Shown here piece by piece: positions 1 to 7,100 of a DNA stretch of 64,000 nucleotides. Under the pieces are notes generated by a model. The model was not told where the DNA came from and did not search any database. It saw only the letters and a list, made by a program, of their open reading frames with translations. The first letter of the stretch is position 1. Every line of letters begins with the position of its first letter. The position numbers and the translations under genes are program-made. The stretch comes from Zygnema circumcarinatum SAG 698-1b. Lineage: Eukaryota > Plantae > Zygnematophyceae. The stretch lies in contig CM074817.1 of assembly GCA_037447605.1 (NCBI GenBank), positions 1,798,001-1,862,000 on the forward strand, in the 5' to 3' direction.

Positions 1-2595
1 CGCACGACGAGATGGTGCAGCGCATGGGTCTCCAGGCTTCGCCATTACTACTTCGTCATATGAACTGACCACCACCTGCAGCATGTGAGTAGGGCGTCTG
101 GTCCAAATCAGAGCTGGCCCTCACTAACACAAGGGCCCTACAGAAAGGCATATAAGACCCTCCAACTTTTCTTCTATGGAAGGGCACCTGTTGGAATGCC
201 AGGCGGAGGGAAGCACGCCAAAGGCCCTGCGTGCGGAGAAGCTCCATCAGACCGCCTATGACCACACTGTCACACTGCGCAGGGGCAGAGCTTCCGAGCA
301 CTCGATGTAGCCACAACGCCATCTCCGCATGCGTGCGATCTCTGGCAAAAGTGACAATTTGAGACTTCTACGGTTTCAGGACATATTGCAAGGTGAAAAC
401 AGGGTTCTCGATTCCGCATCGACAGCCAGTGAACTGCACACACGTCCTCGGAAAGAAGAAGACTCACCGGCCAAACATGTTCCAGAACTCAAAATCCCCG
501 TTGTGAGTGACAAACACGCCAACTTGCTCCTTGCTGCTGTAAGGACATCCATTAAGCTGGTTGACACGCCACATGTATTCTCTGCGAGTTGGGGTCCATT
601 GATGCGGGTGGGTTTCCAGTGGAGAGGGGATGCTGGAGGTGGCAAACCTTGTGTGTCCAGCAAAAAGCTTCATGCTACTGCCGTCTCTACCTGTCCCTCT
701 GGGTCTCCGTTGGAAACACCAGGTAAAAATAGAGCGAAGATAGGCCCAGATTTGGACAAGGGAGCAGCTCCACTGAAATCGTCCAATTAACTGTCATCGC
801 AGAGCAGCAAGAAGCAGGGTGTCAAAATTCATTTATAAGATAAGGATGTCTTACGATTCCTTATGAACTTAGGCTAGACTGAAATGGACTTCATGTTTGA
901 TTATGGACCATGCATATGATGAGCCCTGCTGAAAAAAACACAACTGCAACATGGGAAAGTCTGGAGTCTAATGGCTCTGTAATGAAGTTAGAACCTCAAC
1001 TTAATAAGGGGAGTGGTCGTCCACGAACTTCTCCTATCCATGCTGATTTACGTGAGAGAAACTAAAGAGTGTTTGAAATGGCAAATAGGATATCGCCAGA
1101 CTCCTTAGATGAATTTTGGAGTGAGAGCTGTTTGTAAAACGGAGAAAAATCTAAATGTAAGCAAACGAGCAGAGAGAAGCCTGACACTCTGTGCGGTGAA
1201 AGCTCGCCCTGGAAGAGTTACTGGGCAAGAAACAGGCTTTCTACGCAAAACAAAAAATCAAGCGCGTGCGCAAAAGTGAGTATCATACACGAGGCGCGCA
1301 GTATTGTTGAGTACCTTGTGGGAGAGGGATTCACGCTTGGAGGGGCACACGCGCACGCGTACGGGAGTCATCTCTCCTCCAGACGTCTCAAGGAAGGTGA
1401 CTAGGCCTCCAGACTGCCCCCCACGTTCAGTCGACACGGCCGCCATGGCCTCCAGCACCGCCATTACATCAACTGCCTTCTCCCTGCCAGTAAGCCCAAA
1501 AAGAAACGTGACAGATCAACTTCTGCTCACTAATTGACTTCTCCAGGATACCTCCATTCATGGCGCAGGAGAAAGGTCTTTAATCTCTGAGTCACGTATT
1601 TCCCGACCGTAAAAACTAGAAGAAAGGAGCTATTCCTATTTGAGGTGTTCCCCATGCCAAGCAAGAAAAGTAGGCACGTCTGCACCTACGACCCAGAACC
1701 AATGTCGAAAGTCGTTTTACCTGAGACTGCTTACAGTCCCAGCAAGCAAGAGGCCGAAATTTCCGCAGAAGAATGCAGAATCTCCTACAGTTACCGGCAA
1801 ACTTGCTCGAACCAAATCTGTTGCACTTGCTCCCACCAAGCAGCACAAGCAACCGAGCACAGCTTCTGCTCCGCAGTCCCTCCATGGAAACACAGGGCCG
1901 TGACTAACTTCCCCTCTGTTCAAGGAAAGCATCCATTGGCCTCCACAGAAAATAATAAGACTTGCCAACCAGCCAGTCAAATGAATGGCTCTTGCAACAT
2001 TGCTCTCCGGCCTGGCACAGCAGCTTATTCCCGTGCTAGTTTTAATGCTTGGTGTGAACCCGGGATTTTCTTTTTCCGGCGGAAATATTCTGTCCATGTT
2101 CTGAAAGCCTCGATCGATCGCAGCCAATGCAGAGGCTTCTAATTTTGGATGCGACTCAGGTGGGGAAGGGGAAGCGACCACGTGAGGGGCGAATGAAGCT
2201 GGCAGAGGCCTAAAAGGATTAAGTATAGAGAGCCAGACAGATATTGGAGTATTTCCTGCAAAGTTTGCAAAGGTGCAATAATCTTTAACTCCGCGCATCG
2301 CACAGCCTGCGAGCAAATGTGCCCACTCATGCAGCAGTGTTGCTATAATAAGTCCTAGTCGCAGGGACATGGCAGGAACCACAAGCGCCAGCAAACTTTG
2401 AAAAAGTTCTGCTGCTCCCAACTCTCCAGTCTGCGAAGCAAACCCTACAAATCCGTATCGCATAGAACTGCAGCAAGCAGCAGTTTCCAGCACCCTCAAA
2501 ATGAGGAGGAAAGCCAACAGGCGCCCGGGCATCTCAAACCCGAGCGATGCCACGTGGAGCGCTCCCAGAAGCACAGACATCCTGGGAGCCTCCAT
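1..2595 (-). CDS. Class-II glutamine amidotransferase (GlmS/GFAT-like) protein with N-terminal hydrophobic HExxH domain; multi-exon, 3'-partial (continues beyond left edge)
   Basis: Exons read by eye with GT-AG ends: 2595-1721, 1483-1315, 790-468, 341-188, 75-<1. Motifs: CGNFG, ERGGQSGG, GHTRFATS..P..LETHPH, THNGDF and CDS, matching Ntn/GATase-II motifs. TLLHEWAH lies in a hydrophobic segment of exon 1. Confidence 0.8.
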
Positions 2596-2704
2596 GGCCG
2601 CGCCTCCTGCAGCAGCAGCCTTACCAGGAAGACCCCCTCAGCCCGAACAGCCCGCCCTCCGGCCCAGCCCTCAGACGGAATGAAGTTGCTTTTTATACTC
2701 GCCT

Positions 2705-2995
2705 GAGCGTACGAGACCGTACGGTACAAAAACCGTACTGTTATGTACCAATTACTACGGCACCTCTGCTGGCCTAAGCGTGCGCCACGCGGCAAAACTG
2801 ATCGGTTGACCCAATGGCGGCGGCTTTGGCGGCGGCGACCGCGACCCCATTGGTCGAGCGCACTAGGGGCACACCCTAGAGGACGTGTACGGTTATACGA
2901 ATATGTACGACGGTACAAACGGATAAGCGCCAGCGCTGCCACGTCTTGGTGGCGGTTTCCTCGTGGATTTGTCCGCTGGCCCGGTCCAAGTACAT
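2705..2995. promoter_or_regulatory. Cluster of about 9 GTAC cores upstream of the GlmS-like gene (candidate SBP/SPL-type binding sites)
   Basis: GTAC counted about 9 times in ~290 bp, 110-400 bp upstream of the ATG at 2595; about 1 would be expected by chance. Function is inferred only. Confidence 0.35.
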
Positions 2996-3324
2996 CGCCG
3001 CCGAAACATTAGGGCCTAGTCAGCGGCCCTGAGCGAGAAAGTGGTTACTTTCAGCCAATGAGAGATCGACACGTCAGCAAGGAGTCCATGCTGGCACTTC
3101 GGCGGCTCCGTCGCGACTCGCGGCTGTACGGCTTCTTTCGGACCGTCCGATTCGGACCGACGACGACGAGCAACCGTCCGATCGGTTTGGACGGTTCGGT
3201 CGCCATTCAGCGGAGGCCATTGGTGCACATGGGCGCCGCCGAGGGTGCGTTGACACTGAAACCGTTGGGGACAACGGAACGCCGGCGGTGGCTGGCCCTC
3301 AGTGGGCTGTGCGGGATGATTTTT

Positions 3325-3390
3325 AGGCTTTTTATGATTCTAGGGTTTTAGGTTTAGAGTTTTAGGGTTGAAGGGTTTAGATTTTTAGTG
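3325..3390 (+). repeat. Degenerate telomere-like (TTTAGGG-type) tract
   Basis: ttttaggctttttatgattctagggttttaggtttagagttttagggttgaagggtttag. Confidence 0.5.
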
Positions 3391-4191
3391 TTACAGGATG
3401 TGAACACAGAACTCAAAGAGCAACATTCAGAGATTCAAGCGAGCAAGGAGGACATGATAAACAAACAACCCTTCCCATCTTGCGTCACACAAGGCATGGG
3501 CAGATCTGGGTGCCAAGAATTTACGCATTGCGTAGATGACTAATTACATTGTTTACAACTACCGCCATTGCAAAAAATGTTGGCCTATCTCAGCTACAGC
3601 GAAAAGAATAGCTGAAAAGAATTGACATAGTAATCGACCTAGCATCGATTGTAACCAATGAAATCAGGGTCACCTCTACACACAGCATGCTACAGCAGGC
3701 TAACACCCAATCAAGCTATCTTTGAAAATTGCAGCTCTGCCGGAGGAGCGGTAAACATACAGAATCTGCAGCAGAGGCAAGAATGAAGGCAAAACGTACA
3801 ATGTTCGGAGTACATTCATAGAGAGGAGATAGGTGGACTGAAACGTAGTGAAGAGCACAACGAATAGGAATCTGCCAATCTCTCGTCAAAGTGAGAGAGA
3901 GTCATAGGCCTCTTCAAACGCATCCCTTCAAGCACGAATTTGAACTTCACTCCTCTCTTGGTCGCTGCATTGCCCAAAACTATGGCCGGGCATGTTGGGG
4001 ATGGGCCAAGAGCTGCAGCTCAAGAATTTCCTCCTGCAGGGCCCAAGCAATCGAGCTGCCACCAAAAGCTCTGCATCTCTGCAGCAGTAAAAGGAGACGC
4101 AGCACCTCATCCTCTCGTGTAGCAAGCCGATCGTCGTACATGCATGCATGCATGCATGGCCCCGAAAGCAGAAGAGAGCAATAGCAAGAAT

Positions 4192-7100
4192 TCATGCTCT
4201 CCAAGAGTCCCCTTTTGCCGATTCCAAAAGGCGCAGACGCTTCCTGAAGGTGAGCCCAATGACGACTCCCAAAAACACCAATCCCAATGACAGAGGGAAA
4301 AACCCATCTACATATTTTGCGCATGTGCCGCCGGCAGCTGTGCAGGGGTTTAGTGGCGATGAGGGATTGGCGGGGCATGCGAGGTTACTACTACCCGCCG
4401 GCTGCCCAATGCAGCGGGAGAGAGTGAGCCGATCTATGAGCATGAACACGAAGAATTTTGGCCATGCGGAGCCGAGATTGGATAGGGTGTTGAGAAGAGT
4501 GAGGTATGTTCCACCCATGGAGGAGTCACTTATGCGTGCGAAAAATGTGCCCTGCAAAACCAGAAACTGCTTTAGGTTTTGTGAAAGCTTTGAGATTTCA
4601 GGAGGGTTTAGGATTTAGGACTTCACACTAAACAGGAAAATGCCTCAATTTGCTCCCTGCAGGTTACATATCTGTAACCCAATGAACCTCACCTGTGCTA
4701 CGAACATGATGGTCGATGCGAATGATGTGGTCAGTCCTACTGCAATGATAGCCGCGTAAAAAGCTGGGGCTGTGCGAATAGTGGCTCCCATTGGAAATAT
4801 GGCCACTAGCAGTGTGGTCGTAGCCGCCGTGCCAAGTCGGAGGAAGTACCCCGCCAACCATGGGCTGAAGGGCCGCCCTCGGCTCGCCCAACGGCCGGCA
4901 AAAACCGCAAAGCAGAGCTCTAAAGGGAACTCCAATAGGACAATCAAAGCAATGGTTTCCTGCACACCTGCATATAGCAGATCAGCTACTTCCTCTACTG
5001 AATCTGACTGCAGATCATCATGGGTTCATCATCAGGGTTTTGGGACTGGGCATAAAAGGAGGAAGAGTTAGGTATATTCAAATCAGTCTACAGTTTATGG
5101 TTTTAGGGATGAAATAGGTTTGGGTGACAGAGTTTGTTCACCCGAGAAACGCCCTTCTCCATAAGCTTGAACACTCCTGCAGCTTCTGCTGTGATGCAGC
5201 CCAACTGACATCCCATCCACATGTCCAGAATCAGAACCTCTCTGATCGTTTCTTAAATACGAGCTTTGAGTTTTTTTTTTGTTAAAAGGGATAGCCATAA
5301 GATCCCTGTGTTCAGATGATGCTGACCTTACAAAGCAGGAGCACTGTTGTCAGTGACCGGATATCTGGTAGTGAGAGAGAGAATCAAATCAAGGCCAATC
5401 TGCAGAGAGATGCCTCCCAATGACCTTCACCCACCATGCAATCAACAAATTTTTTGGGCTAAAATGAGACTTCAAGGATGTGAATGCATGTGATATCATG
5501 CACCAAGTATGGGGATACGAGAAAGCGTTGCGACTTTCCAGAGCCGTTGATACATTTGACGAACTCCGATTGAACTTAATGGGCCCCCTCCTGCATGATC
5601 TGTATCGCCTTCATCGAATCTTTCGTCACCATACGAGCTGCTGCTGAGTAACAAATAGTTTCCAGTGTGCGATGAATACATTGGTGGGGTAGATGTTGGG
5701 AGTTCCATGGAATCAGTGGGAGGAGGAGGGGGAGAGGACCCCCCCTGCTCCGTTTTAAAAAGAAGGAGAAGTGCTACAAGGACGGATGCCCATCCCCAGA
5801 ATACTAAATAGTTGGTGAGGGTCAAAACACCTGCACAGAGGATACACCCACACACGCATACATACATACACACAGATATGCAGTCAGCTTCCAATTGAAA
5901 CCTGCTGCTCTGCTTGGATGCAGGAGGGGAGAGACCCTCACCTTGATCTCTTGAAACCCGTCGCAAGTAGCGGTTGCAGAAGCTGGAATCGCTCAAAGCC
6001 AAGAAAATGGTGAAGGAGAGGAAATAGCCGATGTTCATTCCTACCGTCTGCAGTTTTCCATGGGAAACAGAAACACTTAACAGATTCCCATGCGAAACCT
6101 CTCACTGGTATGATATGGGATGGCATGGCATGGCATGGCATGGCATGCCGCACCTGACATGTGGAGGCGTGGCCGAGGCTCTGCTTGGAGAGGAGAGTGA
6201 GGGCCCATCCTGCAGCCACCTCTCCGCGGAGAGAGAGAGTCAGTCGGGGGAATAGAGCCTGCTATTGAGGGGGGTCCGGCCACTGAAAGACTGCCACGTG
6301 GCACGTTGAGGTGGTCGGTCAGCTGTGAGAGAGTTTGATGGAGGCTGACCGTCTACTGCAATGTCCTGCATGAGAGCAATCCATTCCCGCAAGGATCGCA
6401 AGGTTGAGAAGAGGGAAGTAGGAAAGGGGCGAAGGAAGCGACGAGGGGGTGAATAATGGAGTATCAGTGAAAGAGAGTATCGGAGAACTGGTAAAACTTG
6501 GCTGGAACTTGGAACGAAACTGCAAAGTAAAACAAATAATTGCTGAGCAAGATGCAGGAACAAAGGAGACTGTCTAAGTTATTTGCAAGAAAAAAAAGAC
6601 TAATTCGTTACAAAATAGCTTCAACAGGTGCTCAGCGACCAAAACGTGTAAAGAGAGAGACATCACCCATAGAATAGATTCACACAGTTTCAAGACATGG
6701 AAGCTCATTATCTCCCCTATACTTTCCTAAAGTGGCCGCATGCTTACCTGAGTTGCCGCCAGCAGAACGATGACAAAAAAGAGTGACGTCATGGCCCGAA
6801 CATTGGCAGTATCCAGCTATGCTCCCCTCCCTTCCCAAATCTCGGCATCAACTTCCTCCCATACAGACTTGTATGGGATATCTTCTGGTCAGCTGATAGT
6901 CTCTCTGCAGCAATTGCGGAGGAAGCTGCTTTCTCAACTGTGAGAGCTTGTACGACTGTATGATCCTCACTCTGAAACTCTAAAGGTCTCTGATTAAATA
7001 AAAATAAACCTTTATCACAACATCTCCGGGACCCTTGGAAAAAATGAGGTTCATTAGAGGGAAGTCAACTTGAGGCATACCCAAAACTGCGCAGTGGAGC

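What the first reader, a model, noticed from the sequence alone, without database searches (positions are those of the whole stretch)
1717..2595. Ntn amidotransferase whose N-terminal nucleophile Cys is buried behind a membrane HExxH (M50-like) domain
Seen: exon 1 encodes ~275 residues with several hydrophobic segments, TLLHEWAHLLAG and a later HLTGWLASL, directly before FF-CGNFG; the downstream exons are a clear class-II glutamine amidotransferase. Established: GlmS/PurF/AsnB-type Ntn enzymes need the catalytic Cys at residue 1 with a free alpha-amino group, and M50-type intramembrane metalloproteases use HExxH within a helix. Inference: the protein is either a zymogen activated by cleavage at F|C (autocatalytic or by its own membrane protease domain), or a membrane-anchored enzyme with a different chemistry. 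This would be a protease-gated amidotransferase. Similar fusions may already exist in algal databases under a GFAT label.
Basis: partly seen in the sequence, partly recalled or inferred. Interest (0 to 1): 0.72.

Follow-up and report, generated by a model that had tools for sequence, protein, structure and literature searches.

The report
Membrane protease-like domain capping an amidotransferase
This algal gene, like its relatives in many algae, places a membrane zinc-protease-like domain directly in front of the cysteine that an amidotransferase needs at its free end, so the enzyme probably has to be cut, perhaps by itself, to work; no paper found describes the family.

Summary
Window 1717-2595 (minus strand) is a 292-codon first exon with HEWAH in a hydrophobic helix, and CGNFG starts at residue 277. 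Four exons in the window match Klebsormidium nitens 'putative type II glutamine amidotransferase'.

The architecture defines a large uncharacterised family (312 clusters or more) in green and streptophyte algae, haptophytes, diatoms, pelagophytes, dinoflagellates and a cryptophyte. Across 54 N-domains, H89, E90, H93, S212, D260 and C277-G-N are invariant. 111 of 126 long members have HExxH upstream of the cysteine, and most of the others look truncated.

The N-domain resembles site-2 proteases (M50) only weakly. No member reaches Pfam's threshold, four of the six best PDB profile hits are S2Ps, and fold Z is 5.3-6.1. The AlphaFold model puts residues P3-P1 in a strand, with the only other strand lying where S2Ps have their substrate-binding edge strand. 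A Diacronema paralogue without the domain starts Met-Cys.

Most likely this is a zymogen cut at Phe|Cys, possibly in cis by its own protease-like domain. Cleavage is untested, and PurF-type autocatalysis is the main rival. The amidotransferase part is divergent, not 'clear'.

The scan already noted this gene from the neighbouring window (s1-378453).

The parts
1721..2595 (-). Exon 1. It encodes the start codon, the whole M50-like membrane domain (aa 1-276), the Cys277-Gly-Asn-Phe-Gly motif and 10 further residues. It ends in phase 2 at CAG|GT.
   Evidence: ORF; tblastn to Klebsormidium P0006 E 3e-19; boundary read; same intron position and phase in Logan contig L083.
2317..2331 (-). HEWAH (aa 89-93), the putative zinc-binding and catalytic motif, inside a long hydrophobic helix (aa 61-101).
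   Evidence: H89, E90 and H93 are invariant in 54 N-domains. pLDDT above 90 in the model.
2176..2184 (-). H138-V139-V140, a predicted beta strand between the HExxH helix and the next membrane helix. S2P proteases have their substrate-binding edge strand at this position.
   Evidence: DSSP strand 138-140 in the model built with the alignment. The 'PHV' / 'RxVxxP' stretch is conserved in the family alignment. S2P edge-strand mechanism from PMC11864173.
1960..1983 (-). HLTGWLAS (aa 205-212), a membrane helix with near-invariant G-W and invariant S212. It aligns with the GPxxN helix (TM2) of RseP.
   Evidence: S212 invariant; hmmsearch alignment to Aquifex RseP; hhalign to E. coli RseP residues 95-121, E 0.004, above all 40 shuffles.
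1813..1821 (-). T259-D260-L261. The invariant Asp lies near the end of the third core membrane helix and is the putative third zinc ligand.
   Evidence: D260 invariant; D130 of P0028 invariant in the full-length alignment; helix 239-262 at pLDDT above 90.
1768..1776 (-). A274-F275-F276, positions P3-P1 of the proposed cleavage site, predicted as a short beta strand.
   Evidence: DSSP strand 274-276. P2 is F or L in 116 of 140 members, and P1 is mostly F, L, Y or H.
1753..1767 (-). C277-G-N-F-G, the nucleophile motif of the amidotransferase domain.
   Evidence: C, G, N and the final G are invariant in 140 of 140 members and F is present in 138 of 140. The motif aligns with Cys1-Gly-Ile-Val-Gly of E. 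coli GlmS.
1484..1720 (-). Intron 1 (GT at 1720-1719, AG at 1485-1484).
   Evidence: Read from the sequence. It restores the frame and gives the same Cys-to-RGG spacing as the homologous gene in L083 (36 residues), one residue longer than in P0006 (35).
1289..1483 (-). Exon 2 (3' end approximate), carrying the RGGQSGG motif that matches RGYDSAG of GlmS.
   Evidence: tblastn to P0006, E 3e-14.
468..700 (-). Exon 3 (5' end approximate), carrying GHTRFATSS...ETHPH and THNGDFEF (the Thr/His and Asn-Gly motifs of GlmS).
   Evidence: tblastn to P0006, E 1e-35 together with exon 4. Donor CCG|GTGAGT, GT at 467-466. Weak GFAT hit.
188..341 (-). Exon 4, carrying DRTHAEM...QCDSVVIGGLMELLRTQG (the conserved Asp-Ser). 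The gene continues beyond the window start.
2596..4190 (.). Upstream intergenic region between this gene's ATG and the 3' end of the neighbouring acetyl-CoA transporter gene. It holds the presumed promoter and 5' UTR, which are not mapped.
   Evidence: No RNA data were available.

Best explanation
The gene encodes the N-terminal part of a large polytopic membrane enzyme. The family's order is an M50/S2P-like minimal metalloprotease domain, a divergent class-II (Ntn) glutamine amidotransferase domain, SIS-like sugar-phosphate domains, and further membrane helices. The protein is made as an inactive precursor, because the nucleophile Cys277 is internal. A cut of the Phe276|Cys277 bond frees the alpha-amino group that class-II amidotransferases use as general base. 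The most likely agent is the protein's own HExxH...D domain acting in cis. The junction lies only about 14 residues after the Asp ligand. It is modelled as an extended strand, and the only other strand in the model sits where S2Ps have the edge strand that holds substrate residues P3-P1. Shown here: the architecture, its conservation, the invariant H/E/H/D/C residues and the conserved hydrophobic P2/P1. Inferred: zinc binding, proteolytic activity, that cleavage occurs, and that it occurs in cis.
For: Family and conservation. An exhaustive phmmer search found 16 relatives, and every complete one carries HExxH and F-x-CGNFG. Word and profile searches found 312 or more clusters in many algal lineages. 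H89, E90, H93, S212, D260 and C277-G-N are invariant in 54 diverse N-domains at 16-35% identity. 111 of 126 long members have HExxH 67-243 aa before the Cys. The Gonium 'exception' is a truncated gene model: its domain lies upstream of the annotated start.

M50 likeness. The ESM feature search put bacterial M50 clusters first, at 0.88. Per-member Pfam scans hit Peptidase_M50 in 9 of 54 members (best 8.3e-5) and M50B in 6 of 54 (best 4.5e-5). Four of the six best PDB profile hits are S2Ps: RseP twice, aq_1964 and SpoIVFB. In the representative-wide fold search, four S2P structures (two RseP orthologues, SpoIVFB and M. jannaschii S2P) rank in the top 13 of 48,161 chains, at Z 5.3-6.1 over 107-131 residues spanning model 72-266/292. 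hhalign to E. coli RseP TM2 scores above all 40 shuffles.

Geometry. The model built with the alignment has pLDDT 76 overall and above 90 in the core. Its only two strands are 138-140 and 274-276, the latter being P3-P1. S2Ps bind P3-P3' by strand addition to an edge strand (PMC11864173).

Need for a free Cys. The family profile aligns with GlmS from Cys1 through HTRxAT..HPH in register, E about 1e-3, above all 50 shuffles. A Diacronema paralogue that lacks the domain starts exactly Met-Cys, with in-frame stops upstream and no HExxH-coding site upstream of the gene on its strand within the 3 kb fetched.

Site chemistry. P2 is F or L and P1 is aromatic or hydrophobic. RseP cuts RseA at Ala108|Cys109 and a model substrate at L/F-S bonds (PMC10024687).
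Against: Every M50 similarity score is below the usual thresholds. The window's own ORF hits no Pfam model, and no member reaches the M50 gathering score. Foldseek found nothing significant. Z of about 6 is within the noise range for helical membrane proteins, and PsaL scores the same. The Asp sits in a TDL context, not the NxxPxxxLDG of M50. Class-II amidotransferases with propeptides (PurF) are reported to remove them autocatalytically (PMC7056826), so a protease domain is not needed to explain cleavage. I know of no S2P that cuts its own chain. pLDDT at residues 271-280 is only about 70, and the amidotransferase domain was not in the model. There are no RNA or protein data for this species.
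Confidence: 0.45

Rival explanations
1. Autocatalytic zymogen. The Phe|Cys bond is broken by the amidotransferase domain itself through an N-to-S acyl shift at Cys277, as in other Ntn enzymes and PurF propeptides. The HExxH domain would then be a membrane anchor or chaperone, or a protease with other substrates in trans that is delivered stoichiometrically with the enzyme.
For: PurF-type class-II amidotransferases are reported to shed N-terminal propeptides autocatalytically (PMC7056826). The nucleophile motif and glutaminase residues are invariant. The rest of the protein has membrane helices of its own, so the N-domain is not needed to release anything from the membrane.
Against: An anchor role does not explain invariant H, E, H and D over lineages this far apart, and in particular the Glu, which a purely structural metal site would not need. 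It also does not explain the conserved hydrophobic P2/P1, the constant short tether between the Asp helix and the Cys, or the predicted strand at P3-P1. A trans-acting protease remains possible and is not excluded by any result here.
Confidence: 0.3
2. No cleavage. The protein works as an uncut fusion, and the internal Cys acts by different chemistry (or the amidotransferase-like domain only binds a ligand), with the metalloprotease-like domain as an independent module.
For: The amidotransferase domain is so divergent that no Pfam GATase model or PDB sequence profile detects it, so departure from the canonical mechanism is conceivable. No experimental data exist.
Against: C-G-N-F-G and the Arg-Gly, His-Thr-Arg, His-Pro-His, His-Asn-Gly-Asp and Asp-Ser motifs that match GlmS catalytic positions are invariant. 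The domain-less Diacronema paralogue begins Met-Cys, the canonical arrangement for a free N-terminal Cys.
Confidence: 0.17
3. Gene-model artefact. The 292-codon ORF is not all coding, or belongs to a separate upstream gene, and the real amidotransferase transcript starts near the Cys.
For: No transcript evidence could be obtained for this species. The loop at aa 141-198 is poorly conserved and has low confidence.
Against: The Cys motif lies inside the same uninterrupted ORF with no Met near it. The same continuous arrangement is found in transcriptome ORFs of other species and in intron-poor diatom genes. The intron position and phase after the motif are shared with another alga.
Confidence: 0.04

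Closest known systems
Site-2 proteases / peptidase family M50 (RseP, SpoIVFB, M. jannaschii S2P)
   Same: HExxH lies in a membrane helix. It is followed by a short strand, then a helix with a small-residue motif (GWxxS here, GPxxN in RseP), then a helix with an invariant Asp. M50 is the best family by ESM features, Pfam sub-threshold hits, PDB profile and fold search. Like SpoIVFB with pro-sigma-K, the proposed job is to remove an N-terminal pro-segment.
   Different: No member reaches the Pfam threshold. The Asp context is TDL, not NxxPxxxLDG. There are no PDZ or CBS domains. The core is only about 120-200 residues. The proposed substrate is the protein's own chain, which I know of for no S2P.
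Class-II (Ntn) glutamine amidotransferases with propeptides (B. subtilis and plant PurF/GPRAT; also glutamate synthase, from my own knowledge)
   Same: The catalytic Cys is followed by G-x-x-G and is preceded by a peptide that must be removed to give Cys1. The precursor is inactive (PMC7056826).
   Different: The PurF-type propeptides described in PMC7056826 are short and are reported to be removed autocatalytically. Here the pro-segment is a conserved 120-280-residue membrane domain with a metalloprotease-type active site.
GlmS / GFAT (glutamine-fructose-6-phosphate aminotransferase)
   Same: The order is an amidotransferase domain followed by an SxSGxT-type SIS motif. The profile aligns with GlmS residues 2-90 in register. 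SIS gives weak hits.
   Different: The proteins are 1,300-2,260 residues long with large insertions, membrane helices inside the C-terminal half and, in many non-green members such as diatoms, EF-hands. They miss the NCBIfam glmS model entirely. The substrate is unknown.
Klebsormidium nitens 'putative type II Glutamine amidotransferase' (P0006) and UniProt 'Glutamine amidotransferase type-2 domain-containing protein' entries of Volvox, Gonium, Chlamydomonas incerta, Guillardia, Symbiodiniaceae and diatoms
   Same: Same family and same architecture; the window gene is the counterpart.
   Different: They are database entries only. None of the labels seen mentions the N-terminal domain, and seven full-text searches found no paper on the family.

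Membership tests
Peptidase family M50 (site-2 protease) | HExxH motif within a transmembrane helix | tested here: met
   HEWAH at aa 89-93 lies in helix 61-101 and is invariant in 54 family N-domains.
Peptidase family M50 (site-2 protease) | Third zinc ligand Asp in a later membrane helix within the NxxPxxxLDG motif | tested here: inconclusive
   The invariant D260 sits in helix 239-262, but its context is [ST]-D-[LIV] with no NxxP. The ends of the aligned ranges fit D260 lying opposite the Asp of SpoIVFB, but only range ends are reported.
Peptidase family M50 (site-2 protease) | Significant match to the family model (Pfam PF02163 or PF13398 gathering score) | tested here: not met
   The window ORF has no hit. 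The best relative scores 22.5 bits against a cut-off of 27.2. At E<=0.1, 9 of 54 members hit M50 and 6 of 54 hit M50B; no member reaches the M50 cut-off (27.2 bits), and bit scores of the M50B hits were shown only for P0007 (18.2 vs 26).
Peptidase family M50 (site-2 protease) | S2P core fold (three-helix core plus a membrane-reentrant strand) | tested here: inconclusive
   VIA-align Z is 5.3-6.1 to four S2P structures (7w6z, 9j83, 8vjl, 3b4r), all in the top 13 of 48,161 chains, but PsaL scores the same and Z below 8 is weak. Foldseek found nothing.
Peptidase family M50 (site-2 protease) | Zinc-dependent peptide-bond hydrolysis | not testable with these tools
   Needs purified or expressed protein with active-site mutants.
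Class-II (Ntn) glutamine amidotransferase | Nucleophile Cys followed by G-x-x-G, with the glutaminase motifs downstream | tested here: met
   CGNFG is essentially invariant. R-G-x-Q-S-G-G, G-H-T-R-F-A-T, H-P-H, H-N-G-D and D-S are invariant. hhalign to GlmS residues 2-90 is in register, E about 1e-3, above 50 shuffles.
Class-II (Ntn) glutamine amidotransferase | Significant match to a curated family model (Pfam GATase_2/4/6/7) or to a solved member by sequence | tested here: not met
   No GATase model matched 20 members even at E<=1. The profile found no PDB sequence at E<=0.1. ESM features give GATase_6/7 clusters at only 0.89, a lead. Sources label the proteins 'type-2'.
Class-II (Ntn) glutamine amidotransferase | Cys is residue 1 of the mature chain | not testable with these tools
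   In the gene it is residue 277. Only protein chemistry can show the mature N-terminus. The Diacronema paralogue starts Met-Cys.
GlmS/GFAT | Two SIS domains with the sugar-phosphate-binding S-x-S-G-x-T loop and match to the glmS model | tested here: inconclusive
   This part lies outside the window. In relatives, S-x-S-G-x-T-F is invariant, Pfam SIS is weak in 7 of 20 (best 0.0058), and hhalign to the GlmS SIS loop gives E 0.03. The NCBIfam glmS equivalog is far from met.

The most novel reading that the evidence does not exclude
This would be a self-processing intramembrane metalloprotease: an S2P-like domain whose dedicated, single-turnover substrate is its own polypeptide. It would cut the Phe|Cys bond about 14 residues after its own Asp ligand to create the N-terminal nucleophile of a fused amidotransferase. 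That would make it a membrane 'protease-gated' Ntn enzyme shared by most algal lineages with plastids, perhaps switched by calcium in the EF-hand-bearing forms.
Probability: 0.4. Interest if true: 0.85.

Novelty: new variant of a known kind. Interest (0 to 1): 0.7.

Why it matters
Ntn amidotransferases need a free N-terminal cysteine. How propeptides are removed is understood only for short, self-cleaving ones. Site-2 proteases are known as proteases that cut other membrane proteins to send signals. A conserved fusion that places an S2P-like active site about 14 residues from the bond that must be broken would link the two fields. It would be the first candidate for an intramembrane metalloprotease acting on its own chain, and a new way to gate a metabolic enzyme.

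The family is large and occurs in ecologically dominant algae: diatoms, haptophytes, Symbiodiniaceae and green algae. It has no Pfam model for the N-terminal, amidotransferase or SIS-like regions and no paper I could find. Its substrate, probably an amino-sugar-type reaction at a membrane, is unknown.

The hypothesis can be tested directly with a tagged construct and four point mutants in Chlamydomonas or Phaeodactylum.

Tried and rejected
The 5' end of the transcript in this species is unchecked.

2. The single-sequence AlphaFold model was useless (pLDDT 40).

3. Foldseek against the PDB and the ESM Atlas shape search gave nothing meaningful.

4. The word-based homologue search with the 292-aa ORF found nothing, because full-length relatives lie outside its length window. 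The exhaustive search was needed.

5. The full-length profile against the PDB was flooded by EF-hand proteins. Profiles of the amidotransferase region and the SIS region found no PDB sequence.

6. The genome-contig scan, meant to collect diverse GlmS sequences for a better profile, returned only Enterobacteriaceae at 92-100% identity. It was not used, so GlmS and RseP were compared as single E. coli sequences with shuffle controls.

7. The first shuffle script timed out.

8. The transit-peptide reading was rejected on conservation and predicted membrane helices.

9. The 'exceptions' without HExxH were checked. Gonium is a truncated model. Diacronema truly lacks the domain.

10. The spliced model was searched exon by exon by reference. 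The joined protein was not built, searched or folded.
Full report
**What is in the window.** On the minus strand, nt 2595-1717 form a 292-codon ORF, the longest in the first 8 kb.
- It begins with hydrophobic segments.
- HEWAH lies at aa 89-93, HLTGWLASL at 205-213 and TDL at 259-261.
- FFCGNFG lies at 275-281, so the nucleophile-type Cys is residue 277.

The reading frame continues 15 residues past the Cys to CAG|GTAAAA. Exon 1 ends at nt 1721 with donor GT at 1720-1719. The acceptor at 1485-1484 restores the frame. tblastn with the Klebsormidium nitens protein P0006 maps four exons in the window: 2496-1732 (E 3e-19), 1479-1285 (E 3e-14), and 673-188 in two pieces (E 1e-35).

I searched each exon by reference. 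I did not build, search or fold a joined protein.

**Is it a gene family?** Pfam, NCBIfam and PDB sequence searches of the ORF gave nothing. The length-limited word search also gave nothing.

The exhaustive phmmer search found 16 relatives:
- About ten are 190-290-residue ORFs, and eight of them end a few residues after F-x-CGNFG. These look like exon-1 fragments of the same gene in other algae.
- Two are full-length proteins of 1,359 and 1,418 residues.

One such fragment lies on a 10.9-kb Logan contig. There the next exons encode the same amidotransferase motifs, and the first intron sits at the same position and phase as in the window.

Searching with P0006, and then with a 25-sequence alignment, gave 36 and then at least 312 clusters. 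They come from:
- Klebsormidium and Closterium;
- Volvox, Gonium and Chlamydomonas incerta;
- Pycnococcus;
- the haptophytes Chrysochromulina and Diacronema;
- many diatoms and a pelagophyte;
- the Symbiodiniaceae Durusdinium and Effrenium;
- Guillardia theta.

Their labels are 'Glutamine amidotransferase type-2 domain-containing protein', 'EF-hand domain-containing protein' or 'hypothetical'. Several entries are transcriptome ORFs marked complete. In other species, therefore, the mRNA does encode the N-domain in frame with the amidotransferase.

**Co-conservation.** Of 126 long members with the Cys motif, 111 have HExxH 67-243 residues upstream, and CGNFG itself occurs in 121. Most of the others still show the TDL helix and are N-terminally truncated. 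For Gonium I checked the DNA: the M50-like sequence lies in frame directly upstream of the annotated start, and an HExxH ORF lies further upstream.

In an alignment of 54 diverse N-domains (16-35% identity to the window ORF), the invariant columns are H89, E90, H93, S212, D260, C277, G278 and N279.

Around the junction:
- P2 is F or L in 116 of 140 members.
- P1 is mostly F, L, Y or H.
- P1'-P5' are C-G-N-F-G.
- P3-P8 vary.

The Asp and the Cys are separated by a median of about 19 residues. The gap is 17 in the window and 13-14 in the most compact members.

**Is the N-domain M50-like?** Every line of evidence points the same way, and every line is weak.
- ESM features rank bacterial M50 clusters first, at 0.88.
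- Pfam Peptidase_M50 matches 9 of 54 members (best 8.3e-5, 22.5 bits against a cut-off of 27.2). M50B matches 6 of 54, and DUF3267 matches one.
- The family profile against PDB sequences gives six hits at E 0.5-1.6. Four are site-2 proteases, and the alignments run from HExxH to the GPxxN helix.
- With the alignment, AlphaFold gives pLDDT 76 and pTM 0.75, with the core above 90.
- Foldseek finds nothing.
- The Foldseek-independent search over 48,161 representatives puts four S2P structures (two RseP orthologues, SpoIVFB and M. jannaschii S2P) in the top 13, at Z 5.3-6.1 with 107-131 residues aligned over model 72-266/292. PsaL, a generic three-helix subunit, scores alongside them.
- hhalign matches the GWxxS helix to RseP TM2, E 0.004. 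The score of 23-26 compares with a maximum of 17.2 in 40 shuffles.

I therefore call it M50-like in arrangement and probable ancestry, not a demonstrated member.

**Is the downstream part a class-II amidotransferase?** It is divergent.
- No Pfam GATase model matches.
- No PDB sequence matches.
- The family profile aligns with E. coli GlmS from Cys to HTRxAT..HPH in register over 89 columns, E about 1e-3. The score of 31.9 compares with a maximum of 21.4 in 50 shuffles.
- The invariant columns are the expected glutaminase motifs.
- ESM features give GATase_6/7 clusters at 0.89.
- The SIS-like part lies outside the window and is detectable only weakly.

**Mechanism.** From established knowledge, class-II amidotransferases use the free alpha-amino group of Cys1. 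PurF-type enzymes are made with propeptides that are removed to expose it, reportedly by autocatalysis (PMC7056826).

Three results here bear on the question:
- **Diacronema paralogue.** It lacks the N-domain and starts exactly Met-Cys-Gly-Asn. Stop codons lie in frame upstream, another gene lies 600 bp away, and there is no HExxH-coding site upstream of the gene on its strand within the 3 kb fetched. This suggests the family needs the Cys at the end of the chain.
- **Invariant Glu.** H, E, H and D are invariant. The Glu argues for catalysis rather than only a structural metal site.
- **Strand positions.** The model's only two strands are 138-140 and 274-276. The first lies between the HExxH helix and the next membrane helix, where S2Ps have their membrane-reentrant sheet. 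The second is positions P3-P1 before Cys277. In RseP, substrate residues P3-P3' bind by strand addition to that edge strand (PMC11864173). RseP cuts RseA at Ala108|Cys109 and a model substrate after L or F (PMC10024687).

That the two strands pair with each other is my inference from the DSSP string. I could not read coordinates, and the amidotransferase domain was not in the model.

My odds:

| Reading | Probability |
|---|---|
| Cis cleavage by the fused domain | about 0.45 |
| Autocatalytic cleavage, with the domain serving another role | about 0.30 |
| No cleavage | about 0.17 |
| Gene-model artefact | about 0.04 |

**Novelty.** Seven full-text searches found no paper on the family or on any protease-amidotransferase fusion. 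The proteins are in public databases but are unexplained. I rate it a new variant of known kinds: an Ntn zymogen combined with an S2P-type protease.

**Limits.**
- The loop at aa 141-198 is poorly conserved and low in confidence, and could hide a small in-frame intron.
- The organism was not identified beyond 'streptophyte alga'.

Noticed in passing
window 4192-6038 (minus strand; the gene extends beyond this): The gene immediately upstream is an acetyl-CoA transporter of the SLC33A1/Acatn type. Three exon-sized ORFs hit Pfam PF13000 at 1e-22, 3e-9 and 3e-11, all above the gathering score.
   Followed up: partly
window 3344-3385 and about 4570-4625: Degenerate 7-nt repeats resembling the plant-type telomere unit (TTTAGGG / GGTTTTA, 5.9 copies, 65% matches). 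One lies in the intergenic region upstream of the amidotransferase gene and the other lies within the Acatn gene region.
   Followed up: partly
L084:3001-8583 (Diacronema lutheri, P0047): A divergent paralogue of the family lacks the M50-like domain and starts Met-Cys-Gly-Asn-Leu-Gly. Stops lie in frame upstream and a TatD gene lies 600 bp away. It is a natural control for the need of an N-terminal Cys.
   Followed up: yes
L085:888-3102 (Gonium pectorale, P0023): The annotated protein starts MLVFFCGNVG. However, the M50-like helices (GWxxS, SDL) continue in frame upstream of that Met, and an HELAH ORF lies further upstream across an assembly gap. The public gene model is truncated.
   Followed up: yes
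P0026, P0028, P0029, P0036-P0045 and most diatom members (profile positions about 1160-1260 of A1): Many non-green members (diatoms, a pelagophyte and others) carry a pair of EF-hands in the C-terminal half, with calmodulin/centrin-like hits at E about 1e-8. The green-lineage members do not. This suggests calcium control of the enzyme in those lineages.
   Followed up: partly
A4 / P0006:1040-1110 and equivalents: About three hydrophobic helices are inserted in the conserved C-terminal half, followed by a near-invariant block (D-H-x-V-H-R-x-T-H-R-V-x-R-G ... G-R-P-D-G-R) that hits no known family. This region is as unexplained as the N-domain.
   Followed up: no
window 4139-4158: A perfect (CATG)5 microsatellite about 35 nt downstream of the last Acatn-matching ORF (which ends at 4192) on the minus strand.
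   Followed up: no
L083:6001-9110 (Logan contig of run SRR9302961): An AT-richer alga carries the orthologous gene, with the first intron at the same codon and phase as in the window. A peroxidase-like ORF lies upstream. The organism was not identified.
   Followed up: partly
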